IMG/VR virus record: IMGVR_UViG_3300036770_006296
Location: 62,001-126,000 of that record
Strand: one strand, 5' to 3'
Length of the DNA: 64,000 nucleotides
In this document: positions 15,227 to 50,920 of the stretch, in pieces
Layout: every line of letters starts with the position of its first letter
Position numbering within the stretch: position 1 is the stretch's first letter
The notes under the pieces: generated by a model
What the model was told of the DNA's origin: nothing
Seen by the model: the letters and a program-made list of their open reading frames with translations, nothing else
Databases searched by the model: none
Program-made: the position numbers and the translations under genes

Positions 15227-15252
15227 ATTATTTATCCAATAAAAAATGATTT

Positions 15253-15600
15253 CTAAGCTCCTAATCTTTTAACCATCAATTTAAAGAGCCTCATACTATC
15301 AATTCCAGGTAGATCGGAATCCTGGGGATCATCAGTTCTAAACTCTTTAAGAATCACTTTCTGAATACCTTCGAACTCTGTGTCTTTTGGTATATCCCAA
15401 AAAGAGATGTAATATATGTTTATAAAATCTCCCCTAAAAGTGACTCTTGGCGGAATATGAAGTACACCGCTTATGTATAGAACATTATATAAGCCTCGCT
15501 TTTTCGTAACGGGGACGGATACTACTATTCTATCATCAATCAGATCTGCTCTATACCCAAGCTCCTCAATTTCACCCAAGAATTTCTTTGTCACATTCAT
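15253..15600 (-). CDS. terminal member of LRR-20 array; conserved ends, non-LRR core
   Basis: KKFLGEIEELGY...GIDSMRLFKLMVKR. Confidence 0.8.
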   Translation of the reverse strand: MNVTKKFLGEIEELGYRADLIDDRIVVSVPVTKKRGLYNVLYISGVLHIPPRVTFRGDFINIYYISFWDIPKDTEFEGIQKVILKEFRTDDPQDSDLPGIDSMRLFKLMVKRLGA

Positions 15601-16040
15601 AAAAATACCCCTTGTTTAACCATAAGCTTAAATAATCTCTTGGTGTGTATATCATCTATAGATCCTTCCCATGATTCACCCCAATCACCAGATGTGCTAA
15701 ACATATATGTTCCACCCCTTTGATACCCAAGCATAATCTTACTCTTTCCGTTATTGAAAACAGTGGAGGGATGTATCTTAATACCTTGGTCGTATAATCC
15801 CAAAACAATATTGCCACCATTGTTAAATTGAACACCCTCAGGAATCTCCTGTAGCTCCGTTAGATGAACATTACCCTTGTTATTAAAGATAACACCAGAA
15901 GGCAGAGACTTTAAGTGATTAATGCCCACGTTCCACTTGTAAGCAAGCCCATTAGATCCAGTGATCTCAATCTCGTTGCCCAAGATATTATAAGTGATCT
16001 TATCACTATCTAACTGTTCTATAAATTCTTCCCTTGTCAT
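15597..16040 (-). CDS. LRR-20 array protein, ~3 degenerate repeats
   Basis: MTREEFI...LPSGVIFNNKG...KRLFKLMVKQGVFL. Confidence 0.85.
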   Translation of the reverse strand: MTREEFIEQLDSDKITYNILGNEIEITGSNGLAYKWNVGINHLKSLPSGVIFNNKGNVHLTELQEIPEGVQFNNGGNIVLGLYDQGIKIHPSTVFNNGKSKIMLGYQRGGTYMFSTSGDWGESWEGSIDDIHTKRLFKLMVKQGVFL

Positions 16041-16504
16041 ATAAATAAGCCTCTTTTAATCATCAAGTTCAATAACCTCTTACTATCTATTCCCTCTATG
16101 TTACCTTCCCAATTTTTAAACCATACAACATAATTCCCCATTAATGACTCCAAATAGACACTCCCTTCATTCTTAAACTCCACACCAGGCGGAAGGGTTT
16201 TTAATGAGTCCAAATAGACACTCCCTTCATTCTTAAACTCCACACCAGGAGAAATGGTTTCTAATGAGTTCAAATAGACACCCCCTTCATTCTTAAACTC
16301 CACACCAGGAGGAAGGGTTTTTAATGAGCTCAAATAGACATTCCCTCCATTCTTAAACTCCACACCAGAAGGAAGGGTTTCTAATAATGAGTTCAAAAAG
16401 ACAGTCCCATTCCTATCTCCTCTAGTCACCACTAGCTTATCTCCTTTTATCTCGTAGGAGTAACCTTCCTTATCTAACTTCTTTATAAACTTTTCTTGTG
16501 TCAT
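16037..16504 (-). CDS. LRR-20 array protein, 4 repeats
   Basis: VxLxSLxTLPPGVEFKNEG units at 60-bp period. Confidence 0.9.
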   Translation of the reverse strand: MTQEKFIKKLDKEGYSYEIKGDKLVVTRGDRNGTVFLNSLLETLPSGVEFKNGGNVYLSSLKTLPPGVEFKNEGGVYLNSLETISPGVEFKNEGSVYLDSLKTLPPGVEFKNEGSVYLESLMGNYVVWFKNWEGNIEGIDSKRLLNLMIKRGLFI

Positions 16505-16947
16505 ATAAATAAGCCTCTTTTAATCATCACGTTCAATAACATCTTACTATCGATACCTTCTATGTTACCAGTCCATGTATAAATCCATCCTCTGATTAGT
16601 GATTCCAAATAGACACCACCTTCATTCTTAAACCCCACACCAGGGGAAATACTAGTTAGTGATCTCAAACTGACATATCCCTCATTATTAAACTCCATAC
16701 CAGATGGAAGACTAGTTAGTGAATCCAACCAGAGATCCCCTACATTCTTAAACTCAATACCAGGAGGAAGTGTAGTTAATGAGTTCAATTCGACATATCC
16801 TTCATTCCTAAACACCACATCAGAAGGAAGACTATCTAGTAATCTCAAATCGACCCACCGTTTATGATTAATAACTATCTTATCTCCTTCTATCTTGTAG
16901 GAGTAACCTTTCTCTTCTAATATCTCTATAAATTCTTCTCTTGTCAT
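16501..16947 (-). CDS. LRR-20 array protein, 4 repeats
   Basis: Same N-cap, repeats and C-cap; ATGA overlaps. Confidence 0.9.
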   Translation of the reverse strand: MTREEFIEILEEKGYSYKIEGDKIVINHKRWVDLRLLDSLPSDVVFRNEGYVELNSLTTLPPGIEFKNVGDLWLDSLTSLPSGMEFNNEGYVSLRSLTSISPGVGFKNEGGVYLESLIRGWIYTWTGNIEGIDSKMLLNVMIKRGLFI

Positions 16948-17336
16948 ATAAACATTCCCTTACTTATCATGTAGTTCAATAGCCTCTTATTATCTATTCC
17001 TTCTATGTTACCAGTCCATTTATGAAAGTATCCTCCGATTAATGATCCCAAATAGACATCCCCTCCATTCTTAAACACAACACCAGGAGGAAGGGTTTTT
17101 AATGAATTCAAAAAGACATTGCCATTATTCCTAAACTCCACACCAGGAGAAATGGTTTTTAATAAGTCCAAACTGACATAACCTTTATTCATAAACACCA
17201 CTTCAGGAGGAATGGTTTCTAATGAGCCAAAAATAAAACCCCCAATTAAACCCCCTACAACCACTATCTTATCACCTTCTATATTGTAGGGGCAACCTTC
17301 CTTATTTAATATTCCTACAAACTCTTCTCTTGTCAT
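16944..17336 (-). CDS. LRR-20 array protein, 3 repeats
   Basis: Same architecture. Confidence 0.9.
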   Translation of the reverse strand: MTREEFVGILNKEGCPYNIEGDKIVVVGGLIGGFIFGSLETIPPEVVFMNKGYVSLDLLKTISPGVEFRNNGNVFLNSLKTLPPGVVFKNGGDVYLGSLIGGYFHKWTGNIEGIDNKRLLNYMISKGMFI

Positions 17337-17848
17337 ATAAACACACCTTGCTTAATCATCAAGTTCAGAAGCCTCTTACTATCTATTCCCTCTATGTTAC
17401 CTTCCCATTTACTAAACCGAACAAACCGCCCTCCAACTAATGATCTCAAATCGACATCCCCTTCATTCTTAAACTCCACACCAGGAGGAAGGGTTTTTAA
17501 TGAGCTCAAATTGACACCCCCTTCATTCCTAAACACCACGCCAGGAGAAATGGTTTGTAATGATGACAAATCGACATACCCCTCATTCCTAAACACCACG
17601 CCAGGCGGAAGGGTTTTTAATGAGCGCAAATAGACATGCCCTTCATTCTTAAACTCCACACCAGGGGGAAGTGTTTCTAATGATCTCAAATCGACATCCC
17701 CTCCATTATTAAACTCCACGCCAGGGGGAAGGGTTTGTAATGAGCGCAAATAGACATCCCCTCTATGAGTAACAATTATCAGATCTCCCACAATCTCGTA
17801 GGAGTAACCTTTCTCTTCTAATATCTCTATAAATTCTTCTCTAGTCAT
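17333..17848 (-). CDS. LRR-20 array protein, 5 repeats
   Basis: Same architecture. Confidence 0.9.
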   Translation of the reverse strand: MTREEFIEILEEKGYSYEIVGDLIIVTHRGDVYLRSLQTLPPGVEFNNGGDVDLRSLETLPPGVEFKNEGHVYLRSLKTLPPGVVFRNEGYVDLSSLQTISPGVVFRNEGGVNLSSLKTLPPGVEFKNEGDVDLRSLVGGRFVRFSKWEGNIEGIDSKRLLNLMIKQGVFI

Positions 17849-18288
17849 ATAAATAAGCCTCTTTTAATCATCACGTTCAATAACATCTTACTATCTACCC
17901 CTTCTATGTTACCTTCCCATTTACTAAAATAACCCCCAACTAATGATCCCCATTTACTAAAATAACCCCCAATTAATGATCCCAAATTGACATTCCCTCC
18001 ATTATTAAACTCCACTCCAGGAAGAAGCTCCTCCACATGATATAAAATAGCATCCCCACCATTATTAAACACCACACCAGAAGGCATAACTTTTACACTC
18101 CTTAAGTCGACATCACCTTTATTATTAAACTCAACATTAGGAGGAATGCTACTTATTGAGCTTAGCCAAACATTGCCATTATTATCATCGATCCTCCCAG
18201 TATTAACCACTATCTTATCACCTTCGTTACCGTAGGTGTAATAGTAATCCATCTGTTCTAATACATCTATAAATTCCTCTCTTGTCAT
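17845..18288 (-). CDS. LRR-20 array protein, 3 repeats plus 33-bp tandem duplication
   Basis: GSL(I/V)GGYFSKW twice (17916-17981). Confidence 0.9.
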   Translation of the reverse strand: MTREEFIDVLEQMDYYYTYGNEGDKIVVNTGRIDDNNGNVWLSSISSIPPNVEFNNKGDVDLRSVKVMPSGVVFNNGGDAILYHVEELLPGVEFNNGGNVNLGSLIGGYFSKWGSLVGGYFSKWEGNIEGVDSKMLLNVMIKRGLFI

Positions 18289-18980
18289 ATAAATAAGCCT
18301 CTTTTAATCATCAAGTTCAGAAGCCTCTTACTATCTATTCCATCTATGTTACCTTCCCATTCATCAAATCGACCACCAAATAATGAATCAAAATAGACAT
18401 CCCCTCCATTCTTAAACTCCACACCAGGAGGAAGGGTTTCTAATGATTTAAGATAGACATCCCCCCAATTATTAAACTCCACACCAGGAGGAAGGGTTTT
18501 TAATGATCTCAAATCGACATCCCCTTCATTCTTAAACTCCACACCAGGAGGAAGGGTTTTTAATGATCTCAACCAGACATCCCCTCCATTCTTAAACTCC
18601 ACACCAGGAGGAAGGGTTTCTAATGAGTTCAAATTGACATACCCTCCATTCTTAAACTCCACACCATGAGGAAGGGTTTTTAATGAGTGCAAATTGACAT
18701 ACCCTCCATTCTTAAACTCCACACTAGTAGAAAGGGTTTTCAAAAAATTCAGAAAGACATTGCCATTATTCATAAATACCACCCCAGGAGGAAGGGTTTC
18801 TAATGATTCCAAATTGACATTCCCTCTATTATTAAACTCCACACCAGGAGGAAGGGTTTGTAATGATTGCAATTCGACACTCCCATATAACCCTCCTCCA
18901 GTCACCACTAGCTTATCTCCTTTTATCTCGTAGGAGTAACCTTTATTTTTTAATATCTTTATAAAAGCTTCCCTAGTCAT
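18285..18980 (-). CDS. LRR-20 array protein, 8 repeats
   Basis: 60-bp repeats visible line by line over 18361-18890. Confidence 0.9.
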   Translation of the reverse strand: MTREAFIKILKNKGYSYEIKGDKLVVTGGGLYGSVELQSLQTLPPGVEFNNRGNVNLESLETLPPGVVFMNNGNVFLNFLKTLSTSVEFKNGGYVNLHSLKTLPHGVEFKNGGYVNLNSLETLPPGVEFKNGGDVWLRSLKTLPPGVEFKNEGDVDLRSLKTLPPGVEFNNWGDVYLKSLETLPPGVEFKNGGDVYFDSLFGGRFDEWEGNIDGIDSKRLLNLMIKRGLFI

Positions 18981-19444
18981 ATAAACACCCCTTGTTTAAT
19001 CATCAAGTTCAATAACCTATTACTATCTATTCCATCTATGTTACCTTCCCATTCATCAAATCGACCACCAAATAATGAGTCCAATTCGACCTCACCTCCA
19101 TTCTTAAAAACAACATCAGGAGAAATACTAGTTAGTGATTCTAAAACGACATACCCTCTATTATTAAACTCCACACTAGTAGAAAGGGTTTTCAAAAAAT
19201 TCAGAAAGACATTGCCATTATTCATAAATACCACACCAGAAGGAAGGGTTTTCAAAAAATTCAGAAAGACATTGCCATTATTCATAAATACCACATCAGG
19301 AGGAATAGTATCTAATTCTTCCCACTCTTCTATTGAATCCAAATAAACATCACCATCTTCTGTAACCACTATCTTGTCCCCTTCAATCTCGTAGGAGTAA
19401 CCTTTAAGATCTTCTAATACCTTGATAAATTCTTCCTGTGTCAT
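18977..19444 (-). CDS. LRR-20 array protein, 4 repeats
   Basis: Shares a 71-bp identical block with the preceding gene. Confidence 0.9.
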   Translation of the reverse strand: MTQEEFIKVLEDLKGYSYEIEGDKIVVTEDGDVYLDSIEEWEELDTIPPDVVFMNNGNVFLNFLKTLPSGVVFMNNGNVFLNFLKTLSTSVEFNNRGYVVLESLTSISPDVVFKNGGEVELDSLFGGRFDEWEGNIDGIDSNRLLNLMIKQGVFI

Positions 19445-19471
19445 ATAAATAATATGTTTTAATATATTTCA

Positions 19472-20056
19472 TTAAAAATCTAATATTTTTAAATTTCCAG
19501 AACCGCTATAGCCAAATTGATCCCTATGCAAATCCATTCCTGGCTGAGATGTATTCCTCATCTTTCTCAGGTCTTCTATCCCTAAAGTGTCCAGATATTT
19601 TTTCCATTTGTCCGAGAACTTAGAAAAAATCTTTATATACCTTTCCAAACAAACTTTCCATCTTTTCCATATATTCTTTATTTCTATGGTTGAATTCTCA
19701 AGGAGATTCGAAATTATATCTAAATTACTTTGGCTTAAATCCTGTGATAGGATTTCTTCTAGATCTAATTTTGGACTCAAACTCCAAAGCCAATTGTCCA
19801 GTATATCATATTCCCTTCCAGCTTGTTTCGTGTCTAATTTCTCTATTGAGATCCAATCTTTTCCTTCGCCATAAACCACGGGAAAAATGGAAGAATCCAT
19901 TTTTAATAATTCTAAATACCACTTTTCGATTGTTTCGTATCTAGTTTTCTTGAAAACTCTATCAGTATGTAATGGATCATAGAAAACATCGTGCTCAGCC
20001 CCACTACCAAAAGAAGGGCTTTCAAAAAAATTTTCAAATATCACTATATGCTTCAT
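19472..20056 (-). CDS. protein-kinase-like fold protein with CTS
   Basis: FGSGAEHDVF...VFKK (Gly loop, Lys), DLHRDQFG (catalytic loop), LKILDF; MKHIVIFENF. Confidence 0.55.
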   Translation of the reverse strand: MKHIVIFENFFESPSFGSGAEHDVFYDPLHTDRVFKKTRYETIEKWYLELLKMDSSIFPVVYGEGKDWISIEKLDTKQAGREYDILDNWLWSLSPKLDLEEILSQDLSQSNLDIISNLLENSTIEIKNIWKRWKVCLERYIKIFSKFSDKWKKYLDTLGIEDLRKMRNTSQPGMDLHRDQFGYSGSGNLKILDF

Positions 20057-20076
20057 AATTTTATATTATGTACTCT

Positions 20077-20130
20077 CTAATTTAGATATCCTTTCTTGTC
20101 TAATATCTTTATAAAACTCTCTCTAGTCAT
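20077..20130 (-). pseudogene. truncated first member of the LRR-20 array
   Basis: MTRESFIKILDKKGYLN* matches the array N-cap; GATATATAGATGT directly upstream. Confidence 0.7.
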
Positions 20131-20149
20131 ACATCTATATATCGTTATT

Positions 20150-21100
20150 CACATCGCCTCGTTACCCCGAGGCAAGCACCTATAAACTTGCCCCGTTTTC
20201 GCCCCGTTCCTCACCAAATACTCCACTTCGCCCCGCAACCTCTAATTAAACTATCTTAAAGCGCGGAATAGAAAAATCCCCATTTAGTCCCCCGATTTTT
20301 CCACTAAAATGATCAGAAATTTCTACCCTAAAAATGGGGGGACTAAAACGATAAAAACCCCCAAACACGCCCCCGCTCTTATACATACTACTACTAGCTA
20401 TTACCACCTATTAACACCTACTACTAACTAGACATATACCTATACATATACAGTACAGCATACACATATACACTAGACACACTCCTACCCCTATAAATCA
20501 ACATACCTTAATTAAACTAATAAAAACAAAAAGAATCACTACATCTACTATAGTACATAGAGTACCCATATCTATATAGACACCTACCCCTACTGTATAC
20601 ACAACCCATACCCCTACTGTATATGAAAGGGGACGTATAGATGACCCCGCGCTCACACGTATACACGTACTTAATAGATAGAGACACAAGGGCATTTTTA
20701 TAGCGTCCCGTGCATCCAAAATACTCCATGATAACTACCCCTTTGACCTCCCGTGGAAAGGCCCGTAGAATATACCACAGAGTGAGCAAGGTTAAACCCA
20801 CTTTCTACGTGCGCCTCGGAAGGCCCCCAGGGGGACCCCACGCGGTCTCGAGCGGGCGATTATCTGGGATTTTCTGGGAATCTCCTGGAGATCTAGGATA
20901 CCTTCCCGGGGAACTCCCGAGGATTCCCTGGGATTCCCCTGGATATTCTTAGAAACTCTTGGAAACCCCTGGATGCGTGCGAGTGCGGGGGCGAATCCGG
21001 GTGATCCCGGGAGTCACGAAAAATATTTGGATAGGGGGATTTACTTTTTGATAAACTTTTTATATAATTGAAATATAAGAAAGGAGGGGAAAATTTAGGA
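20150..21100. other. non-coding divergence region, candidate origin or control locus
   Basis: No credible ORF; C-rich to G-rich switch; CCCCTACTGTATA x2; GGGG(A)CTAAAA units; CTGG(G)A array. Confidence 0.45.
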
Positions 21101-21160
21101 ATCGTTTTTTTCTTCCGAGGAGAACTGCTAAATTTGCAAAAAATAAAAACGTAAAAAGCG

Positions 21161-26459: not shown

Positions 26460-27269
26460 ATGAAATTATTTGATGAACGCCAGGTGAAGATGATGAAATA
26501 TCTTTCCTCTGGACTTCCACCACAGAGTAGATGGCGGTACAATCCGGTAACAGACCTTATAGATATAGAGGGGGATTTCAATTGTGGATGGACGGGTTTT
26601 AAAGATTTTAGAGGAGTTAAATTTGGAAAGATCACTGGACATTTCGATTGTTCCGGTATAGGACTCACCAGTTTAATAGGAGCTCCTGAAGAGGTCGGAA
26701 AAGATTTCAATTGTTCGAAAAACAATTTAACTAGTCTTGAAGGTGCACCTAAAAAGGTTGGTTATAGTTTCAATTGTTCAAAAAACTCTCTAGAAAGCCT
26801 AGAAGGAGGTCCTGAATATGTTAGGGGAAATTATGATTGTTCGAGTAATAAGCTCGTTACTCTTAAAGGATCCCCTAAAGCTTTACGCAGGGGGAGTAAA
26901 TTTATTTGCTCCAATAATCTTTTAAAAGATTTAAACGGGTTAATAGATAATGATTTTATGGGATTTTTTACATGTAAACGCAATCCCCTTACTAGTCTGG
27001 AAGGAGCACCAATCAACATAGAACCTTATTGGGATGGAAGTTATGAAGGAAAAATTTCATATTATGGAAATAAAGGTGTTTCGGGAAAGGTGCTCGAATT
27101 AATTCATCTCACGATGATTGAAAAGAAAGTGCCATTTATTATCGCTCTAGGTATTCTTAAGAACGAGATAAAATCGAGCGATCTTAAGAAGCTACTTCCT
27201 TCGGATCAGGAGAACGTAGAAGATGTACTAAAAGGAGCTAGCATGTTAGCTAAATTTGAATCTTTCTAA
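26460..27269 (+). CDS. LRR-21 family protein with KG-tag
   Basis: FNCSKNNLTSLEGAPKKVG repeats; ends KGASMLAKFESF. Confidence 0.88.
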   Translation: MKLFDERQVKMMKYLSSGLPPQSRWRYNPVTDLIDIEGDFNCGWTGFKDFRGVKFGKITGHFDCSGIGLTSLIGAPEEVGKDFNCSKNNLTSLEGAPKKVGYSFNCSKNSLESLEGGPEYVRGNYDCSSNKLVTLKGSPKALRRGSKFICSNNLLKDLNGLIDNDFMGFFTCKRNPLTSLEGAPINIEPYWDGSYEGKISYYGNKGVSGKVLELIHLTMIEKKVPFIIALGILKNEIKSSDLKKLLPSDQENVEDVLKGASMLAKFESF

Positions 27270-30291: not shown

Positions 30292-31314
30292 ATGGCAAGA
30301 ACAAAAAAAGCAGAAGGGTCGGTAACGACCGAGACAACGGCTAAGAAAGGTCTTAGTGAAGAGACAAAAGCAAAGATCTCTGAGGCGTTAAAACGCAGAA
30401 AGACTTCAGTGGTCGAAGCAGCGGAAGCGCTATCTCCTAAGTTGGTAGCGGATGAGTCCAAAATCAAGGAGGAAGGAAACATCGTTACTCTTAACGACTA
30501 CTTCAAAGTCGAGAAGGGGACTTTCGAGATACTCAAGCACAACATCGGCTATGGTATCAATACGATGCTTATCGGGGCAACGGGTACTGGAAAGACGGAA
30601 GTCGTGGCTAACATCGCTAAGGTGTTCAATGTTCCGCTGACTATCTTCGACATGGGTACAATGACCGATCCTGTAATGGGACTTGTGGGTACTCACGTCA
30701 TCACAGTTGAGAATGGGGTGACTAAGTCGGAGTTCAAACGCTCTCGCTTCTCGGAACTCATTCAGCAACCAGGTATCATACTCTTAGACGAGATCTCCCG
30801 AGCCGGAGCGATGGCTAACAACCTTCTCTTCCCTTGTCTCGACTTCCGTAGAGAGTTACCGATGGAGTACTCGTTCCACGACACAACTCCAATCCCGGTT
30901 CACCCACAGTGCGTATTCTTCTCAACGGCTAACATGGGAAGTCAATATACGGGAACTCACAAATTAGACCGTGCCTTACTTGACCGTTTCATGCTCATCG
31001 AAGTAGACTCGATCAAACCAGAGGACATCATCGCAACACTAACCGCAGAGTTTCCGAAAATCACTAAGACGAAAATCAAGAAGTTGGTAAGCGTGTTCAC
31101 CAAAATCAACAAGGAACACGACGAGTTCAAAATCTCGTTCAACCTCTCAGTTCGTCACCTTAAGACTATCGCCAAATTGGTCTCTAACGGCTTCACAATC
31201 TACGACGGTTATGTCGCTCTTTGTAAAGGTCTCGGTAGTCAAGAAGGTTTGAAAGCGATTAACGCAATCTTGGACGATGCTAAAACCTCAACGGATACAG
31301 ATACAGAATCCTAA
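30292..31314 (+). CDS. MoxR-class AAA+ ATPase (CobS/CbbQ/NorQ-like)
   Basis: GATGTGKT, ILLDEISR, NMGSQYTGTHKLDRALLDRF. Confidence 0.9.
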   Translation: MARTKKAEGSVTTETTAKKGLSEETKAKISEALKRRKTSVVEAAEALSPKLVADESKIKEEGNIVTLNDYFKVEKGTFEILKHNIGYGINTMLIGATGTGKTEVVANIAKVFNVPLTIFDMGTMTDPVMGLVGTHVITVENGVTKSEFKRSRFSELIQQPGIILLDEISRAGAMANNLLFPCLDFRRELPMEYSFHDTTPIPVHPQCVFFSTANMGSQYTGTHKLDRALLDRFMLIEVDSIKPEDIIATLTAEFPKITKTKIKKLVSVFTKINKEHDEFKISFNLSVRHLKTIAKLVSNGFTIYDGYVALCKGLGSQEGLKAINAILDDAKTSTDTDTES

Positions 31315-31433
31315 TTCGTAAGGACTCAACAGGACTGGCGGCAAAACACCGCCAGTCTTTTTTTTGAAATCATTTTTTTCTCTAAGTAGAATTTTCTATA
31401 TTAGCTATGTAAACCAATTAAAACAAAAAAACA

Positions 31434-32984
31434 ATGGGTAAGTATGGATATGGATCTTGGGGCTCAGGCTACGGTAGGAAGACTTGGTCTTCAACATCGG
31501 GCTGGGAGAACTCACACTACGGAGGGTACAATCGACTAATTTACGATTATCCCTTCATCAAGTTCGATTATAAGGCAAACATCGAAGTCTCGCAAGACTT
31601 AAGAACCCAATTAGGTATCTGGTCGGCGGAAAAGCTTATCAAGATGTATCTTATGAAATGTAAGGAGAAAGGACTTCTTAAACGTTTAATTCGTGAACGT
31701 ATAACTAAGAAAAACTTTCTTGGGCAGGAAAAACATTACGACGTTCTTAAGCTAGATAACGAAGTCGTTCTAGAAGCGGTGATGAAAGAGTTCAAAGAAT
31801 TTGCTCCTCTCTTCGACCACTATCGTAATGAGATACTTTCGAGTAGCCTACAAATCGAAGTTCCGCCACCAGGAAACGAAGGTGGAGGAGGACAAGGTAA
31901 AGGCGAAGGGGAAGACAAAAAAGAAGGCCAAGGTAAAGGAAAGGGTGAAGGCGAGGGAGAAGGTGAAGGAGAAGGTGAAGGTGAAGGTGAAGGAGAGGGC
32001 AAAGGTAAAGGACAAGGTAAAGGACAAGGCGAAGGGGAAGGCGAAGGGGAAGGCGAAGAAGGTAGAGGCGAGGGTAAAGGAAAACCGAGTAAGAAAGGCG
32101 GAGGTTGGGGACCTTCGGATGGTGATGCTCCGGACTTCAAAGAACTTGAACGAGTACTTAAGGAAATGTCGGAACAAAAACCTTTCGAGAGCTTTAAAGG
32201 TCTCGGAGCAGAATGTAACCCTAAATTCGTTCCACCAAAAAAGAATGCGAAAGACTACAAGTTCAAGACCGATGAGATTAGAAATGCCGAGATGATGCTC
32301 AAACAACTCGACATCAGTTTTGAACCAAAGAGTGACGAAGTAAAGAACCTTAAACTCGGTAAGCTTGACACTTCAAAATTGGCAGAAGTACCCGCAGGTA
32401 ATATCTCCGTCTACAAACAAACTTTGGAGGATCAAGATACGAAACCATTTGCGGTATGTGTGTTGGCAGACATGTCGGGTAGTATGCAAGGTGCTAGACT
32501 CGATACTCAACTTAAGGTACTTAACGCTTTATATCTTGCCTTAAGCGAAATTATACCGGAAGAGGACCTACACATTTACGGTCACAGTGGAAATTCGTCA
32601 GAACCTAAGATATACACCTTCTGTAATCCGTATCACCCAGACTACCGAAAGAATATTCAAGACTATTATAGGATAGAGAATAACACTAATTACGACGGGA
32701 TTGTTATAGAACAGGTACACAAAAAGATACGTGAGAAAACAGATCGCCCAGTAATTCTGATTAGTCTTTCTGACGGTCAACCTTGTGATAGCGTGGCAGA
32801 CATGAAACGAATTCTTGAAAGAGCTAGACGAGACTCATTCGTTACAGTAGGTATCGGTATTGGTACAGACTACGTCAAAAAACTCTACACTTATTCGAGA
32901 GTGGTACACGACGAAAAGCTACACGAAATGCCGAGAGAGGTAGCGGGAATTATCAACCATGTTGTTAAAGCCGAATTCAAATAA
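31434..32984 (+). CDS. vWA (MIDAS) protein, CobT-like, with (GE)n linker
   Basis: [13 protein letters not shown]; long GEGEGE tract. Confidence 0.88.
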
Positions 32985-33150
32985 ATCCATATCCATACCC
33001 GAGAAGGGGAAGACTTCGGTCTTCCCTTTTTTTTGTGGGCTAAACCTTAGTCCTGCCGGCAGATTCTCTGGGGAACCCCAGGAAACTGGATACAGAGATC
33101 ATTTTTTTCTTTAATTAGAATTTTCTACATTAGCTATGTAACCAATTAAT

Positions 33151-33867
33151 ATGAAAATACTAGGATTTAATTTCCTTACTCTAAGACAGATAATATTTTT
33201 AAACGAGTTCACTTATGGCAAGTGGACTCTTAACAAGAAGACTGGACTGGTCGATATAGAAGGAGATTTCAATTGTTCAGATAAAAAATTAACCGGCTTT
33301 AAAGGTGTTCGGTTTGGAGTGGTTACTGGGAGTTTCTATTGTTACGATAACAATCTCACAAGTCTTGAGGGAGCGCCACAAAAGGTTGGATGGTATTTCG
33401 ATTGCTCCCATAACTCTCTCACAAGTCTTGAGGGAGCGCCACAGAATGTTGGGAGGGATTTCCGTTGCTACAATAACAAGCTCACAAGTCTTGAGGGAGC
33501 GCCGCAGAAGGTTGGATGGAGTTTCTATTGCCCATATAACAGGCTCACAAGTCTTGAGGGAGCGCCACAGGAGGTTGGAGGGTGTTTCTATTGCTACAAT
33601 AACTCTCTCACAAGTCTTGTGGGAGCGCCACAGGAGGTTGGAGGGAGTTTCGATTTCTACGGTAATCCGATCTCAGAGAAGACGTTAAAGTTGGTATGGG
33701 AGACGATGAGAGATAATAAGATCGACTATTGGTTTGCTTTATCGATACTTAAGAGCCAGATCGAGAGTGAGGATTGGAAGAAGATGTCTATAGGCTTAGA
33801 CGAGAGATTATCTAAAGACGCTCTGAAGGGTATTTCAATGATGGATCGGTTTGGACATTTTGATTAG
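33151..33867 (+). CDS. LRR-21 family protein with KG-tag
   Basis: 63-bp repeats FxCxxNxLTSLEGAPQxVG; ends KGISMMDRFGHFD. Confidence 0.9.
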   Translation: MKILGFNFLTLRQIIFLNEFTYGKWTLNKKTGLVDIEGDFNCSDKKLTGFKGVRFGVVTGSFYCYDNNLTSLEGAPQKVGWYFDCSHNSLTSLEGAPQNVGRDFRCYNNKLTSLEGAPQKVGWSFYCPYNRLTSLEGAPQEVGGCFYCYNNSLTSLVGAPQEVGGSFDFYGNPISEKTLKLVWETMRDNKIDYWFALSILKSQIESEDWKKMSIGLDERLSKDALKGISMMDRFGHFD

Positions 33868-33931
33868 AATCATTTTTTTCTTTAAATAGAATTTTCTACA
33901 TTAGCTATGTAATTAAAAACAAAATAAGGGT

Positions 33932-35440
33932 ATGGGTAAATATGGATATGGATCGTGGAATTCTTGGGGTTCCGGTTGGGGATCTGGAAAAGGAAAGGGT
34001 AGTGTTTCCGGATGGGAGAATTCGCACTTCGGTGGATACAACAGAGTACTAACGGATTACCCTTACATCAAGATCGACTTCGAACTTGATATTAAAGCGG
34101 GTAAAAAGATTGGAGAGGATCTCGGATCGTGGATGGGTGACAAACTAATCAAGCTTTATATTCTTAAAGCGAAGGAATTAGGTTTAATCGAGCAATTACA
34201 AACCGAGGTTGTTGAGCGGATGAAATTCTTGCAACTTAAAAAGTACGTAGTTGCAAAATTGGACGATGAGCTTGTGTTTTCCCTTATCTGTGGAGCTTAT
34301 ACCGAGCTAGCTCCTATGTTCGAACATTACAAAGAAGGGATCTTTGAAAGCACCCTAGAGATGGAAATAAAAGACGGAGAGGAGGGTAAGGGTAGTAAGA
34401 GCGATAAAGGAGAAGAGAACGAAGGCGAAGGTAAAGGAAAAGGTGAAGGCCAAGGCGAAGGCGAAAAACAGGGCGAGGGTCAAGGTGAAGGCCAAGGTGA
34501 AGGTGAAGGTGATGCAAAAGATTCACCAGGAAAAGGAACGGGTCAGCCTACAAGAAACGGTAAGACGATACATCAATACATGAACGATATAGGGGAGGTT
34601 AAACCTTATAGCTCGCATAGTTCGTTAAGTGACTTCTCCGAAAAACCTAAATTTATCTCGTTCGCTCAAAGAATAAAAGAGGAAGGAAAGTCTCCTTATA
34701 AATTCTCTCCAGTAGAGATAAAAGATGCCGAAGCTTTAATTAAGTTATTGGATATCGATTTTGACCCAAAAAGCGACGAGGTTAAAAATCTTAAGCTCGG
34801 TAAGCTAGACGTCAGTAAGATAGCAGAGGTACCCGCAGGTAATGTATCGGTCTACAAACAGATAGTCGAAGAACAAGATACCAAACCATTCTCCGTCTGT
34901 ATCTTAGCCGATATGTCTGGTAGTATGGGATATGGTAATCGGATAGCTTCTCAGCGTCATATATTAAACTCGCTTTATCTGGCAATGTCGCAGATACTTC
35001 CGCCAGATAAACTTTACATCTACGGACACAGCGGAGAATACACCCCGGAGATCTATACGTTCTATAGTCCTTACGATCCCGACTACGAAAGGAACATCAA
35101 ATACTACCAGAAAGTACATTGGTGTCAGAACTACGACGGTCCGGTTATCGAAGCTATCCATAAGAAGATACGAGAAAACTCAGAAGACCGTATTATCTTC
35201 ATATCACTATCCGACGGTGAACCAGCAGGTAACAACTACGGAGGTCTTAAAGATAACGAAGAGCTCAAAAGAATACTTGAGAGAGCTAGACGAGACTCAT
35301 TCGTTACAGTAGGTATCGGTATTGAAGCAGGCCACGTATCAAGCCTATACACATACGCCAAACCAGTATGGGATTTATCAACCCTACCGAAAGACGTAGC
35401 AGGTATCATCAATCAAGTGGTTCGAGCCGAGTTCAAGTAA
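33932..35440 (+). CDS. second vWA (MIDAS) paralog
   Basis: [15 protein letters not shown]; same [10 protein letters not shown]-term and GE linker. Confidence 0.88.
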   Translation: MGKYGYGSWNSWGSGWGSGKGKGSVSGWENSHFGGYNRVLTDYPYIKIDFELDIKAGKKIGEDLGSWMGDKLIKLYILKAKELGLIEQLQTEVVERMKFLQLKKYVVAKLDDELVFSLICGAYTELAPMFEHYKEGIFESTLEMEIKDGEEGKGSKSDKGEENEGEGKGKGEGQGEGEKQGEGQGEGQGEGEGDAKDSPGKGTGQPTRNGKTIHQYMNDIGEVKPYSSHSSLSDFSEKPKFISFAQRIKEEGKSPYKFSPVEIKDAEALIKLLDIDFDPKSDEVKNLKLGKLDVSKIAEVPAGNVSVYKQIVEEQDTKPFSVCILADMSGSMGYGNRIASQRHILNSLYLAMSQILPPDKLYIYGHSGEYTPEIYTFYSPYDPDYERNIKYYQKVHWCQNYDGPVIEAIHKKIRENSEDRIIFISLSDGEPAGNNYGGLKDNEELKRILERARRDSFVTVGIGIEAGHVSSLYTYAKPVWDLSTLPKDVAGIINQVVRAEFK

Positions 35441-39292: not shown

Positions 39293-39889
39293 ATGCCTGG
39301 AATATTAATGGATCTAAGAAAATTAACGGAATACCAACCTTGGTTATTTAGAAACAAACACATGCAGCCAGTTATGGAAGCTCTTATGGAAGCACGTATA
39401 AATATCTTTAAGGACGAGGTACTATCCTCATTGAAAGGAGGTGATTCACTAACCGAGGATCAGATACGTATACTAGCCCTTTCTACCGATGCTTCTATTC
39501 ACATTAGGAAGGATGGAAAGATTAACGTGAATGGAATTTTTAACTGCTCTGGATTAGGACTAACTGATTTGTGTGGACTTCGATTTGGTAGAGTAAAAGG
39601 AAGATTTATTTGCAGAAATAATTCTATAACAAATCTTGAAGGGTTTCCTATTGAGGGAGATCCGGAGGTATTCTTTGACAGAAACAAAGGTATATCCGAC
39701 GGAACCTTAGATCTTATATTTGAAGCTATGAGAAAGAACCAAATGGACTATTGGTCGGCTTTATGTGTTGTTAAAAGCGAGATAGACTCTAAAGAATGGG
39801 TTGTTATGTCTAAAGGGATAGACGAGAGACTTTCACAAGACGCTCAGAAGGGAGCTTCGATGTTGGGACGATTTGGACATTTTGATTAA
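39293..39889 (+). CDS. minimal LRR-21 family member with KG-tag
   Basis: 1-2 repeats; ends KGASMLGRFGHFD. Confidence 0.85.
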   Translation: MPGILMDLRKLTEYQPWLFRNKHMQPVMEALMEARINIFKDEVLSSLKGGDSLTEDQIRILALSTDASIHIRKDGKINVNGIFNCSGLGLTDLCGLRFGRVKGRFICRNNSITNLEGFPIEGDPEVFFDRNKGISDGTLDLIFEAMRKNQMDYWSALCVVKSEIDSKEWVVMSKGIDERLSQDAQKGASMLGRFGHFD

Positions 39890-39929
39890 ATCATTTTTTT
39901 CTTTAAGTAGAATTTTCTACATTTATAGT

Positions 39930-40688
39930 ATGGAACTTAATAAAGAACAAATAGAATTTTTAAACGGGTTTACTAAAGGCAAATGGACTCTTAACAAGAA
40001 GACCGGACTAGTTGATATAGAGGGTTATTTTGATTGTTCATGTGAAGAATTAACCGATTTTAAAGGTGTTCGGTTTGGAGTGGTTACTGGGAGTTTCAAT
40101 TGCAGCGGTAACAATCTCAAAAGTCTTGAGGGAGCGCCACAAGAGGTTGGACTGGGTTTCGATTGCGACAATAACAATCTCAAAAGTCTTGTGGGAGCGC
40201 CACAGAAGGTTGGAGATTATTTCAATTGTTACTGGAACAAGCTCACAAGTCTAGTGGGAGCGCCACAAGAGGTTGGAGGGATTTTCGATTGTTCCAGTAA
40301 CAAGCTCACAAGTCTAGTGGGAGCGCCACAAGAGGTTGGAGAGATTTTCGATTGTTCCTATAACAAGCTCACAAGTCTAGTGGGAGCGCCACAGAAGGTT
40401 GGGCGTTTCGATTGTTGCTATAATAAGCTCACAAGTCTAGAGGGAGCGCCACAGAAGGTTGGGGAGGGTTTCTATTGCTACAATAACCCAATCTCGGAGA
40501 ATACTCTGAATTTAGTGTGGAACACTATGCAAGAAAAAAAGATCGACTACTGGTCGGCTTTATGTATTCTTAAGAGTGAAATCTCAAGGAGTGATTTCGA
40601 GAATTTAGAGGGAGAGTTGGAAAAGAGACTTTCACAAGACGCTCAGAAGGGGGTTTCTATGTTGGGACGGTTTGGACATTTTGATTAA
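39930..40688 (+). CDS. LRR-21 family protein with KG-tag (start corrected)
   Basis: ~6 repeats; ends KGVSMLGRFGHFD. Confidence 0.9.
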   Translation: MELNKEQIEFLNGFTKGKWTLNKKTGLVDIEGYFDCSCEELTDFKGVRFGVVTGSFNCSGNNLKSLEGAPQEVGLGFDCDNNNLKSLVGAPQKVGDYFNCYWNKLTSLVGAPQEVGGIFDCSSNKLTSLVGAPQEVGEIFDCSYNKLTSLVGAPQKVGRFDCCYNKLTSLEGAPQKVGEGFYCYNNPISENTLNLVWNTMQEKKIDYWSALCILKSEISRSDFENLEGELEKRLSQDAQKGVSMLGRFGHFD

Positions 40689-50074: not shown

Positions 50075-50920
50075 ATGAAACATCACATTTTTCAGCAATC
50101 AGTTACAGGACGTAACGAAGTAGTAGACGCTTACCTAAGCGAAATCAACAAAATCTCGATGGTCAATCCGGACGAGGAAAAAGTTCTTTGCGACCGTATC
50201 ATCTCTGGCCAGAATGGCTTAGACGAAAAGGCTCGTCAAAGATTTGTCGAGGGCAACTTAAGATTTGTCGTATCGGTTGCGAAACAGTACCAAGGTTCGG
50301 GACTAGAGTTAATGGACTTAATCAACGAAGGGAATGTCGGCTTAGTTAAAGCTTCCCAACTATTCGACCCGACCAGAGGTATACGTTTCATCTCATTTGC
50401 AGTTTGGTGGGTTCGCCAGGCAATCATGGAGTCGCTAAAAGAGAAAGGGCGTTTGGTAAAACTCCCTCTAAATCAAATCAACGCTCAAAAGAAAATCTCC
50501 CGTGAAATGGACCAAATCCTAAAGACGGAAGGGTTCACATCGGTTGACTTGGCAGCGGCTTCTTTAGGACTCGAGCCGGAAAAATACCAAACACAATCTT
50601 CAGTTTCGCTAAGTACACCTATCGGAGAAGAAGACTTCACACTAGGCGATACTCTATCAGACGGAACAGTTTCAGATGAGGGATTAGAAAAACTAAGTTT
50701 TATCAAACAGATATCCGCAGTACTTAAAACGTTAGAGGAAAGAGAAAGCTTCGTAATCTCTAACTGGTTCGGAGTCAACGGTCAGTCACAAAGACCAAAA
50801 AGCGATATTGCAAAAGACCTCGGAATCTCAGAAGAGCGAGTAGAACAAATCTACCACAAAGCAATTCGCAAACTCAAAGCTTCTAACCGCTCTCGCCTAC
50901 TAAAACATTTTGTTTCATAG
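50075..50920 (+). CDS. RNA polymerase sigma70 factor, Bacteroidota RpoD/SigA-like
   Basis: NLRFVVSVAKQY, DLINEGNVGL, FDPTRG.RFISFAVWWVRQAI; region 4 HTH. Confidence 0.93.
   Translation: MKHHIFQQSVTGRNEVVDAYLSEINKISMVNPDEEKVLCDRIISGQNGLDEKARQRFVEGNLRFVVSVAKQYQGSGLELMDLINEGNVGLVKASQLFDPTRGIRFISFAVWWVRQAIMESLKEKGRLVKLPLNQINAQKKISREMDQILKTEGFTSVDLAAASLGLEPEKYQTQSSVSLSTPIGEEDFTLGDTLSDGTVSDEGLEKLSFIKQISAVLKTLEERESFVISNWFGVNGQSQRPKSDIAKDLGISEERVEQIYHKAIRKLKASNRSRLLKHFVS

What the first reader, a model, noticed from the sequence alone, without database searches (positions are those of the whole stretch)
15253..20130. Tandem array of nine genes with constant caps and a variable number of 20-aa LRR-like repeats, apparently shuffled by recombination
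Seen: nine ATGA-coupled genes share an N-cap (MTREEFI..L...GY.Y.I.GDKIV) and C-cap (W.GNIEGIDSKRLLNLMIKRGLFI). They carry 0, 3, 4, 4, 3, 5, 3, 8 and 4 units of GxVxLxSLxTLPPGVEFxNx at a 60-bp period. Scaffold codons stay near-identical while the x residues on the predicted beta-strand vary widely. A 71-bp block is identical in two genes (18712-18782 = 19164-19234), and there is a 33-bp tandem duplication at 17916-17981. Established: LRR concave faces bind ligands, and lamprey VLRs diversify by module assembly. Inference: a phage-encoded, antibody-like binder repertoire, probably late-expressed from the LP at ~20140, aimed at host defence proteins or receptors.
Basis: partly seen in the sequence, partly recalled or inferred. 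Interest (0 to 1): 0.82.

Follow-up and report, generated by a model that had tools for sequence, protein, structure and literature searches.

The report
Recombining LRR-protein gene array in a phage
A large uncultured freshwater phage carries an operon of nine small leucine-rich-repeat-like proteins whose exposed residues evolve fast, and natural strains differ in gene and repeat-module content, so it looks like a viral set of binding proteins, though the targets are unknown.

Summary
On the minus strand, nine ORFs (15253-19444) are linked by ATGA stop/start overlaps. They share N- and C-caps and carry 3-8 units of a 20-aa (60-bp) repeat. The ninth is a degenerate member. A 17-codon cap stub (20078-20131) and an unrelated kinase-like ORF lie upstream.

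AlphaFold models are confident solenoids (pLDDT 91-93). The closest solved structure is the Vibrio LRR protein FlrP, and the closest sequences are YopM/SspH1 repeats. No Pfam LRR model matches.

The family has hundreds of clusters, all unannotated. It was found only on phage contigs, often as ATGA-coupled arrays.

Unit positions 2, 4, 6 and 20 were defined from other phages. There dN is 2.3-5 times dS, while scaffold and caps are under purifying selection.

Near-identical strains in independent metagenomes carry different arrays. These include 692-, 901- and 1156-bp deletions at identical blocks between paralogs, changes of 1-3 units, and in-frame chimeras that recombine modules.

Recombinational shuffling is therefore supported. 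"Antibody-like" overstates it: this is population-level variation with no dedicated mechanism found. The late promoter and the proposed targets are unsupported. Best reading: a co-expressed cytoplasmic binder set in phage-host conflict.

The parts
18977..19444 (-). g1, 155 aa, 4 repeat units (the first has an insertion). It contains an internal 60-bp tandem duplication that is absent in some strains.
18285..18980 (-). g2, 231 aa, 8 repeat units. AlphaFold pLDDT 92.7. Absent or fused to g1 in several natural haplotypes.
17845..18288 (-). g3, 147 aa, 3 units, with a 33-bp tandem duplication (17916-17981) that doubles GSLIGGYFSKW before the C-cap.
17333..17848 (-). g4, 171 aa, 5 units. A strain variant lacks 120 bp (2 units).
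16944..17336 (-). g5, 130 aa, 3 units. Missing together with g4 in haplotypes L058 and L073.
16501..16947 (-). g6, 148 aa, 4 units. AlphaFold pLDDT 91.1 with a 76-sequence alignment.
16037..16504 (-). g7, 155 aa, 4 units. Absent in haplotypes L068 and L073.
15597..16040 (-). g8, 147 aa, a divergent member with 3 irregular units. It has an orthologue in another phage (L015). Strain SNPs are 11 synonymous to 3 nonsynonymous.
15253..15600 (-). g9, 115 aa, the most divergent member, with about 2 degenerate units and a family-type C-cap.
20078..20131 (-). 17-codon N-cap stub (MTRESF...YLN*). It is the remnant of a former first array gene, directly behind the conserved leader.
19472..20056 (-). Unrelated 194-aa ORF between the stub and g1. 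It has a protein-kinase-like fold (a lead only). In the syntenic phage L002 an HNH endonuclease gene occupies this place.
20168..20195 (-). 10-bp-stem hairpin in the conserved leader upstream of the array. The leader is also read as an N-terminal extension in homologues from other contigs.
18712..18782 (.). 71-bp block identical to 19164-19234 (g2 versus g1). It is one of many exact inter-paralog blocks that serve as crossover sites.

Best explanation
The locus is an operon of small, soluble, probably cytoplasmic LRR-type solenoid proteins. Each has a constant N-cap (helix plus beta-hairpin), 3-8 twenty-residue coils and a constant C-cap helix. It belongs to an unannotated family found only in large uncultured phages. 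In each coil the core residues (V3, L5, L8, L11, V15, F17, N19) are fixed. The outward-facing residues of the stretch x18-N-x20-G-x2-V-x4-L-x6 are hypervariable and rich in Asn, Asp, Glu, Tyr, Arg and Trp. Stacked along the solenoid they would form a ligand-binding face. New specificities arise in two ways: point substitutions under positive selection, and homologous recombination or slippage between the near-identical scaffold and cap sequences of neighbouring paralogs. Recombination deletes or duplicates whole genes, changes unit number and creates in-frame chimeras with new module combinations. Phage strains in nature therefore carry different sets of these genes. Shown here: architecture, fold class, phage restriction, selection pattern, recombinant haplotypes. 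Inferred: the proteins are co-translated from one transcript (ATGA coupling), act inside the infected cell (no signal peptide), and bind variable host proteins, or proteins of competing elements, in a phage-host arms race. Counter-defence or host takeover is the most likely role.
For: Architecture and coupling. Fold: AlphaFold pLDDT 91.1 and 92.7, with two short strands per unit. Foldseek top PDB hit is the Vibrio FlrP LRR (8z5u), E 6.6e-5, TM 0.71/0.57, rmsd 2.7 A, 27% identity. Sequence hits: YopM 1.6e-13, SspH1 1e-6. Family: more than 1100 clusters at 90% identity, lengths stepping by about 20 aa, all 'hypothetical'; 1215/723/278 representatives at E 1e-3/1e-10/1e-30. Atlas clusters are 100% Viruses. 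None found in 185,579 cellular genomes. Arrays recur in L002, L006, L008, L009, L012 and L013. Selection: at the positions defined from other phages (2, 4, 6, 20), dN/dS(all codons) is 2.29 [1.77-2.98] in the window, 5.1 in L002 and 3.3 in L006; the rest gives 0.5 and the caps 0.26. Strain differences in g2 fall on positions 2 and 6. Recombination: exact inter-paralog blocks up to 71 nt. Haplotypes with 692-, 901- and 1156-bp deletions, changes of -1, -2 and -3 units, and g1/g2 and g3/g6 chimeras occur in independent assemblies, including k141 contigs and a Logan contig at full flank depth. Conflict context: a Tad3 homologue adjoins the array in L009 and a kinase-like gene adjoins it here.
Against: No binding partner, expression timing or phenotype is known. 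The host is unknown. dN/dS was computed between paralogous repeat units with a simple Nei-Gojobori count, not on a phylogeny of orthologues. For L002 and L006 the site choice is partly circular. Gene conversion can mimic some of the signal. The Tad3 adjacency is a single case, and I found no known anti-defence family next to the window's array. Haplotypes come from short-read assemblies, and no single read or contig spans a whole array. Surface exposure of the variable positions is inferred from the strand pattern, not measured on coordinates.
Confidence: 0.55

Rival explanations
1. The proteins are virion-associated adhesins or host-range modules. The constant caps dock them onto fibres or the capsid, and the variable LRR face binds cell-surface glycans or proteins. 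Array variation would then tune host range.
For: LRR domains are common adhesins. Receptor-binding proteins are typical phage hypervariable loci. Glycosyltransferase and OmpA-like genes lie in the same 15 kb. LRR modules are proposed as host-recognition elements on Goslar fibres. The strongly conserved caps could be docking elements.
Against: The proteins are only 115-231 aa, with no known virion-anchoring domain and no structural PHROG or Pfam hit. The neighbours here and in L002, L003 and L009 are regulators, PrimPol, ligases, HNH and kinase-like genes, not tail or capsid genes. Nine co-translated paralogs would have to compete for the same docking site.
Confidence: 0.2
2. The array is an unstable tandem-repeat locus whose variation is largely neutral. 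The proteins have one generic role (for example a scaffold or chaperone-like spacer, as FlrP is in the flagellar motor), and gene or unit number drifts by slippage.
For: All rearrangements use ordinary homology of 11-59 nt. The closest solved structure, FlrP, is a structural spacer. Strains with as few as about 5 genes exist.
Against: dN exceeds dS 2- to 5-fold specifically at four outward-facing positions in three independent arrays, while scaffold and caps are constrained. All recombinant ORFs observed are intact and in frame. The array architecture is maintained in divergent phages.
Confidence: 0.12
3. The proteins are nucleic-acid mimics or nucleic-acid binders, that is, regular charged solenoids that decoy restriction or other DNA-targeting enzymes, or that read nucleic acid in a modular way.
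For: g1 is very acidic (pI 4.05, net charge -18). The solenoid periodicity and the frequent Asp/Glu/Asn at variable sites recall DNA-mimic repeat proteins.
Against: Charge is not a family property. pI is 4.05-6.6 within the array and 4.4-9.75 across the family. No similarity to pentapeptide-repeat or other mimic families was found in the Pfam, PDB or Foldseek searches.
Confidence: 0.06

Closest known systems
Flavobacterium psychrophilum tandem LRR-protein locus (Duchaud 2007; Altae-Tran et al. 2020, PMC10392669)
   Same: Same-strand tandem array of paralogous LRR proteins (up to 19 there). Repeat number varies per gene (2-14). Caps are constant. Hypervariable positions lie on one face. Strains differ through recombination at short homologies.
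   Different: That locus is bacterial and its proteins are surface-exposed (signal peptide plus a type-9 secretion C-terminal domain), with repeats of about 22 aa and gene fragments between the genes. The array here is phage-encoded. It has no signal peptide, uses 20-aa units, and packs its genes tightly with ATGA overlaps. Sequence homology between the two was not tested.
LPX-type 20-residue LRRs of type III effectors (YopM, SspH1/2, IpaH)
   Same: Same 20-residue period and the L-P-P motif. These are the best sequence matches in the PDB (YopM E 1.6e-13, SspH1 1e-6). In those effectors the LRR is the target-recognition module.
   Different: No NEL ubiquitin-ligase domain, no secretion signal, and a much smaller size. 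The core pattern is VxFxNxGxVxL rather than LxxLxLxxNxL. No Pfam LRR model matches. The array is encoded by a phage, not a bacterium.
Vibrio polar-flagellum LRR protein FlrP (PDB 8Z5U; bioRxiv 10.64898/2025.12.04.692373)
   Same: A small stand-alone LRR beta-solenoid of about 200 aa. It is the best structural match (Foldseek E 6.6e-5, TM 0.71 by target, rmsd 2.7 A, 27% identity).
   Different: FlrP is a single-copy periplasmic protein with a Sec signal. It acts as a spacer on the flagellar rod. It is not a variable multigene family.
Lamprey variable lymphocyte receptors
   Same: Modular LRR binders in which diversity comes from the combination of LRR modules and from variable residues on the beta-strand face.
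   Different: VLRs are assembled somatically from donor cassettes into an incomplete germline gene and have disulfide-bonded caps. Here all genes are complete, the proteins have 0-1 cysteine, no cassette bank was seen, and the variation lies between strains, not between cells.
Multigene repeat-protein families and gene 'accordions' of large eukaryotic DNA viruses (poxvirus ankyrin host-range genes; FNIP/LRR families of giant viruses). From my own knowledge, not tested here.
   Same: Virus-encoded paralog expansions of repeat-type binding proteins linked to host interaction. Copy number changes by recombination.
   Different: Different repeat types and different hosts. I found no report of an equivalent LRR array in a bacteriophage.

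Membership tests
Leucine-rich repeat (LRR) structural superfamily | Tandem repeats of 20-30 residues that form a solenoid, with flanking caps | tested here: met
   60-bp / 20-aa period. AlphaFold solenoid with N- and C-caps, pLDDT 91-93.
Leucine-rich repeat (LRR) structural superfamily | Canonical conserved segment LxxLxLxxN/CxL, recognised by LRR profile models | tested here: not met
   The unit consensus is GxVxLxSLxTLPPGVEFxNx, with the core pattern VxFxNxGxVxL. No Pfam LRR family at E<=1 for any of the nine proteins.
Leucine-rich repeat (LRR) structural superfamily | Significant sequence or structure similarity to proteins with solved LRR folds | tested here: met
   YopM 1.6e-13, SspH1 1e-6, FlrP 5e-5 by sequence. 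FlrP by Foldseek: E 6.6e-5, TM 0.71/0.57. The 4-unit model alone gave only weak hits.
IpaH/SspH NEL effectors and YopM | C-terminal NEL E3-ligase domain (IpaH/SspH) and delivery by bacterial type III secretion | tested here: not met
   Only a cap of about 25-30 aa follows the repeats, with no Pfam domain. The family was not found in cellular genomes.
Lamprey VLR-type assembly system | Incomplete receptor gene plus a bank of partial LRR cassettes | tested here: not met
   All nine ORFs are complete with both caps. The only fragment is the 17-codon stub.
Lamprey VLR-type assembly system | Cysteine-rich LRRNT/LRRCT caps | tested here: not met
   0-1 cysteine per protein.
Lamprey VLR-type assembly system | Associated cytidine deaminase that drives the assembly | not tested
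   Only about 45 of the window's proteins were scanned, and the rest of the 206-kb contig was not available.
F. psychrophilum-type tandem LRR surface-protein locus | Tandem paralogs with variable unit number and strain-to-strain recombination | tested here: met
F. psychrophilum-type tandem LRR surface-protein locus | [quoted passage not shown] | tested here: not met
   The N-terminus MTREEFIEILEEKGY is charged and is predicted to be a helix. No secretion-domain hit in Pfam.
Diversity-generating retroelement (DGR) target | Reverse transcriptase plus a template/variable repeat pair with adenine-directed changes | tested here: inconclusive
   No reverse transcriptase among the proteins scanned. 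The variation is explained by inter-paralog exchange. The window was not scanned exhaustively.
Known anti-defence protein families | Profile match to a described anti-defence family | tested here: not met
   No such Pfam or PHROG match for array members. PADLOC gave nothing. There is only a neighbouring Tad3 homologue in locus L009.

The most novel reading that the evidence does not exclude
The array is a viral counterpart of NLR/VLR-style recognition: a heritable, recombining set of LRR binders. A phage population would use it to keep pace with polymorphic host immune or surface proteins. The variable face of each paralog would capture a different target. The invariant caps would couple every paralog to one common partner, for example a protease, a kinase or another effector, so that the proteins act as interchangeable targeting adaptors.
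Probability: 0.3. Interest if true: 0.88.

Novelty: new variant of a known kind. Interest (0 to 1): 0.72.

Why it matters
Counter-defence and host-takeover proteins of phages are usually found one family at a time. This would be a whole locus built to generate binding diversity. It sits in a phage that is widespread in fresh water (near-identical copies in metagenomes from ten or more studies). Natural recombinants show the process at work. The family is large, unannotated and absent from cultured phages, so it marks a blind spot in phage annotation. The small, cysteine-free, well-predicted 20-residue solenoid with only 4-6 variable positions per coil is also an attractive natural scaffold for engineered binders. 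If the targets prove to be host immune proteins, the locus would be a direct readout of which host defences matter in nature.

Tried and rejected
- Pfam, PHROGs and PADLOC gave no meaningful family for any array member. The sub-threshold 'DSRB' hits only reflect the motif LxSLxxxPxGVxFxN.
- INPHARED phage genomes: no DNA match, and only one marginal protein hit (Tetrasphaera phage TJE1, E 1e-3).
- Cellular genomes: two scans found only chance-level single matches.
- Rfam on the upstream region: nothing credible.
- Promoter and terminator scans, and searches for the sequence at ~20140 or for T4-type late-promoter motifs, gave chance-level results. The proposed late promoter could not be confirmed.
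- The leader fold is not more stable than shuffles overall. Only one hairpin is robust.
- Long family hits (300-1100 aa) were examined for informative domain fusions. They are just longer repeat runs or neighbour-gene fusions.
- The 242-246-aa genes downstream of the arrays in the window, L002 and L009 were tested for shared homology with the Tad3-like gene. None was found.
- A uniform DNA-mimic charge pattern is rejected.
- The window's second repeat family (22-aa units) is not detectably related.
- The cap tree is poorly resolved because there are few columns. Only the starred clades were used.
Full report
**1. What is in the sequence**

The feature lies on the minus strand. Nine ORFs run from 19444 down to 15253 (g1-g9: 155, 231, 147, 171, 130, 148, 155, 147 and 115 aa). 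Every one of the eight junctions is an ATGA stop/start overlap.

Tandem Repeats Finder reports period-60 arrays inside six of the genes. The best is 8.2 copies at 82% matches, score 636. It also reports the 33-bp tandem duplication at 17916-17983. The 71-bp identity 18712-18782 = 19164-19234 is exact.

g9 is a degenerate family member (hhalign probability 95%, E 1.9e-8) with about two eroded units, rather than a repeat-free gene.

Upstream of g1 lie an unrelated 194-aa ORF (19472-20056) and then a 17-codon N-cap stub ending in a stop (20078-20131). In homologues from other contigs the same conserved leader runs directly into a full-length first gene. In the syntenic phage L002 an HNH endonuclease gene sits where the 194-aa ORF sits here. 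The stub is therefore best read as the remnant of a tenth gene that was disrupted by an insertion.

**2. Source**

The window is part of IMG/VR contig IMGVR_UViG_3300036770_006296 (206.6 kb). It has no DNA match among 50,697 deposited phage genomes.

The window also encodes a sigma factor, a PrimPol, a MoxR-type ATPase with two VWA proteins, HTH regulators, a glycosyltransferase and a metallophosphoesterase. I saw no virion genes among the roughly 45 proteins scanned.

**3. Fold**

AlphaFold models are confident. g6 was modelled with a 76-sequence alignment (pLDDT 91.1, pTM 0.83). g2 was modelled with a 27-sequence alignment (pLDDT 92.7, pTM 0.82).

Both show:
- an N-terminal helix plus beta-hairpin;
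- two short strands per 20-residue unit (VxL and VxF);
- a C-terminal helix.

The 8-unit model matches the Vibrio flagellar LRR protein FlrP (PDB 8Z5U) with Foldseek E 6.6e-5, TM 0.71/0.57, rmsd 2.7 A and 27% identity. All other hits are weak LRR or beta-solenoid matches. The depositors describe FlrP as a classic LRR solenoid.

By sequence, the best PDB matches are the 20-residue LPX-type repeats of YopM (1.6e-13), SspH1 (1e-6) and IpaH. However, no Pfam LRR model matches. The core pattern is VxFxNxGxVxL rather than LxxLxLxxNxL. I therefore call it an atypical LRR-like solenoid.

**4. The family**

A search of 5.8 billion proteins gave more than 1100 clusters, all unnamed. Lengths cluster at about 128, 148 and 168 aa. 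An exhaustive profile search of 1.84 billion representatives gave 1215, 723 and 278 hits at E 1e-3, 1e-10 and 1e-30.

ESM Atlas clusters are 100% viral. Two scans of one genome for each of 185,579 prokaryotic species found nothing above chance.

ATGA-coupled arrays recur on other large phage contigs: six genes in L002 (which is syntenic with the window), and further arrays in L006, L008, L009, L012 and L013.

In a tree built from the caps, the canonical paralogs cluster by phage (L002 clade 97/95, L006 97/89; labels cluster better than all 200 shuffles). In contrast, the divergent terminal member g8 has a clear orthologue in L015 (100/100). This points to concerted evolution or recent expansion of the canonical members next to older, fixed ones.

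**5. Selection**

Among 29 in-register units of the window, F17 and N19 are invariant. G1, V3, L5, L8 and V15 are 90% conserved or more. Positions 2, 4, 6, 9, 18 and 20 are variable.

To avoid circularity I defined the variable sites from other phages (positions 2, 4, 6 and 20). I then measured Nei-Gojobori distances between units:

| Data set | dN at variable sites | dS (all codons) | Ratio [bootstrap interval] |
|---|---|---|---|
| Window units | 0.89 | 0.39 | 2.29 [1.77-2.98] |
| L002 units | 0.88 | 0.17 | 5.1 [4.05-6.75] |
| L006 units | 0.51 | 0.16 | 3.3 [2.05-5.43] |

The remaining positions give a ratio of about 0.5 and the caps 0.26.

The variable sites are occupied mostly by N, E, D, Y, G, R, S and W, and rarely by aliphatic residues. 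They alternate with core residues along the stretch x18-N-x20-G-x2-V-x4-L-x6. That they form one exposed face is an inference from this pattern, because I could not read model coordinates.

Strain-level SNPs in g8 are 11 synonymous to 3 nonsynonymous, which indicates purifying selection. The differences seen in g2 (N74S, Y94R, H98S) fall on unit positions 2 and 6.

**6. Recombination and natural polymorphism**

This is the decisive part. Within the array there are many long exact matches between different genes (71, 66, 59, 54, 52 nt and more).

The array sequence is present at 99% identity or more in metagenomes of ten or more studies, from subsurface, freshwater, estuary, river, lake and drinking-water samples.

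I painted independent contigs by exact matches onto the window. This gives the following haplotypes:

- **A:** as in the window (L061, L062).
- **B:** a g1/g2 chimera formed by crossover in the 59-nt identical C-cap block, a 692-bp deletion. Seen in four samples (L058, L063, L064, L065).
- **C:** a 1156-bp deletion that removes g1 and g2, through a 14-nt identity at the gene starts. Seen in L059, L060 and L076, and in a Logan contig of run X5. In X5 the contig depth (12.6) equals the flank depth and g1 has almost no coverage.
- **L058:** also lacks g4 and g5, a 901-bp deletion at the 45-nt identical N-cap block.
- **L060:** lacks two units inside g4.
- **L071 and L075:** lack one unit in g1 (135 aa).
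- **L073:** carries a 175-aa g1/g2 chimera with a different crossover. It also lacks g4, g5 and g7.
- **L068:** carries an in-frame chimera of g3 (N-cap plus units 1-2), g6 (units 2-4) and another paralog's C-cap, followed directly by g8.

(Evidence for all of these.)

The junctions lie in identical blocks of 11-59 nt. Several of these contigs were built with k = 141 or k = 119, which is longer than the shared blocks. The Logan junctions (k = 31) involve blocks of only 14-20 nt. Assembler collapse is therefore an unlikely explanation. Still, no single molecule spanning a whole array has been seen.

**7. Interpretation**

The evidence shows a phage-restricted family of LRR-type solenoids. They have constant caps and a positively selected variable face. 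They are organised as a translationally coupled operon, and its gene and module content is reshuffled by ordinary homologous recombination in natural populations.

The most likely function is therefore a set of binding proteins engaged in an arms race. Three points suggest that they act inside the infected cell rather than on the virion:
- there is no signal peptide;
- the proteins are small;
- the neighbours are non-structural, here and in relatives (HTH regulators, PrimPol, HNH, ligases, a kinase-like ORF).

In one related phage the array directly abuts a Tad3 (Thoeris inhibitor) homologue (76.8 bits against a cut-off of 27). That adjacency is not conserved.

Parts of g8-g9 occur in a few RNA-seq libraries of aquatic samples (shares of 0.06-0.30). 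This is weak evidence of transcription and could be DNA carry-over.

Expression timing is unknown. The proposed late promoter near 20140 has no support.

**8. Comparison and novelty**

The closest described system in logic is the tandem LRR surface-protein locus of Flavobacterium psychrophilum. The closest repeats by sequence are those of YopM, SspH and IpaH. The closest structure is FlrP. The array meets none of the features that define membership of those families beyond the LRR-like solenoid itself.

The comparison with lamprey VLRs holds only for the principle of modular LRR diversity. There are no cassettes, no cysteine caps and no sign of programmed assembly.

Literature searches found no description of such an array in a bacteriophage. 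I rate it a new variant of a known kind, with high interest, because the family is large, unannotated, ecologically widespread and caught in the act of diversifying.

Noticed in passing
window 26460-27269 (+) and 39873-40688 (+): There is a second, unrelated repeat-protein family: two proteins of about 270 aa with 22-aa units of the type FDCSxNKLTSLxGAPxxVG and a shared C-terminal domain. They hit PHROGs of unknown function (phrog_7816, phrog_21719). They are not detectably related to the array family (hhalign probability 0.2%).
   Followed up: partly
window 20132-21160: A non-coding stretch of about 1 kb at about 42% GC lies between the array and the divergent plus-strand genes. It contains CTGGGAWTCC-like repeats spaced 10 bp apart (20864-20974), several other short direct repeats, and an 18-nt inverted repeat (20283-20347). 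It could be an origin of replication or a regulatory hub. There is no Rfam match.
   Followed up: partly
window 19472-20056 (-): This 194-aa ORF sits between the N-cap stub and g1. ESM Atlas feature and structure neighbours include Phage_T7_kinase and other small kinase-fold clusters (score 0.95, TM 0.5-0.7). Pfam and PHROGs find nothing. Run X1 shows loose contig ends at 19502, 20034 and 20066, which suggests that strains differ around this gene.
   Followed up: partly
window ~15228: In all four metagenome runs laid on the stretch, a contig diverges from the window exactly at 15228 with the same 30-nt consensus. This point is just past the 3' end of the metallophosphoesterase gene. That gene's product also differs in length between assemblies (229 versus 237 aa).
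   Followed up: no
L009 13525-14265: A 246-aa protein directly downstream of the LRR-like array in a related phage contig matches Pfam Tad3 (Type I Thoeris inhibitor) at E 1.5e-21.
   Followed up: yes
L014 3952-4839 and L015 6583-6906: In L014 the N-cap and repeats are fused to an unrelated C-terminal region of about 110 aa in place of the C-cap. In L015 a truncated member carries an internal duplication (KGGYSYR twice) and lacks the C-cap, so it is probably a decaying copy.
   Followed up: no
window 30292-35440 and 50075-50920: A MoxR-type AAA+ ATPase is followed by two CobT-like VWA proteins of about 500 aa. A phage sigma-factor gene (phrog_351, E 7e-52) lies further downstream.
   Followed up: no
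window 16000-20000: GC skew is strongly negative here (-0.34 to -0.41) compared with the flanks. The skew coincides with the array and presumably reflects its repetitive codon content on the minus strand.
   Followed up: no
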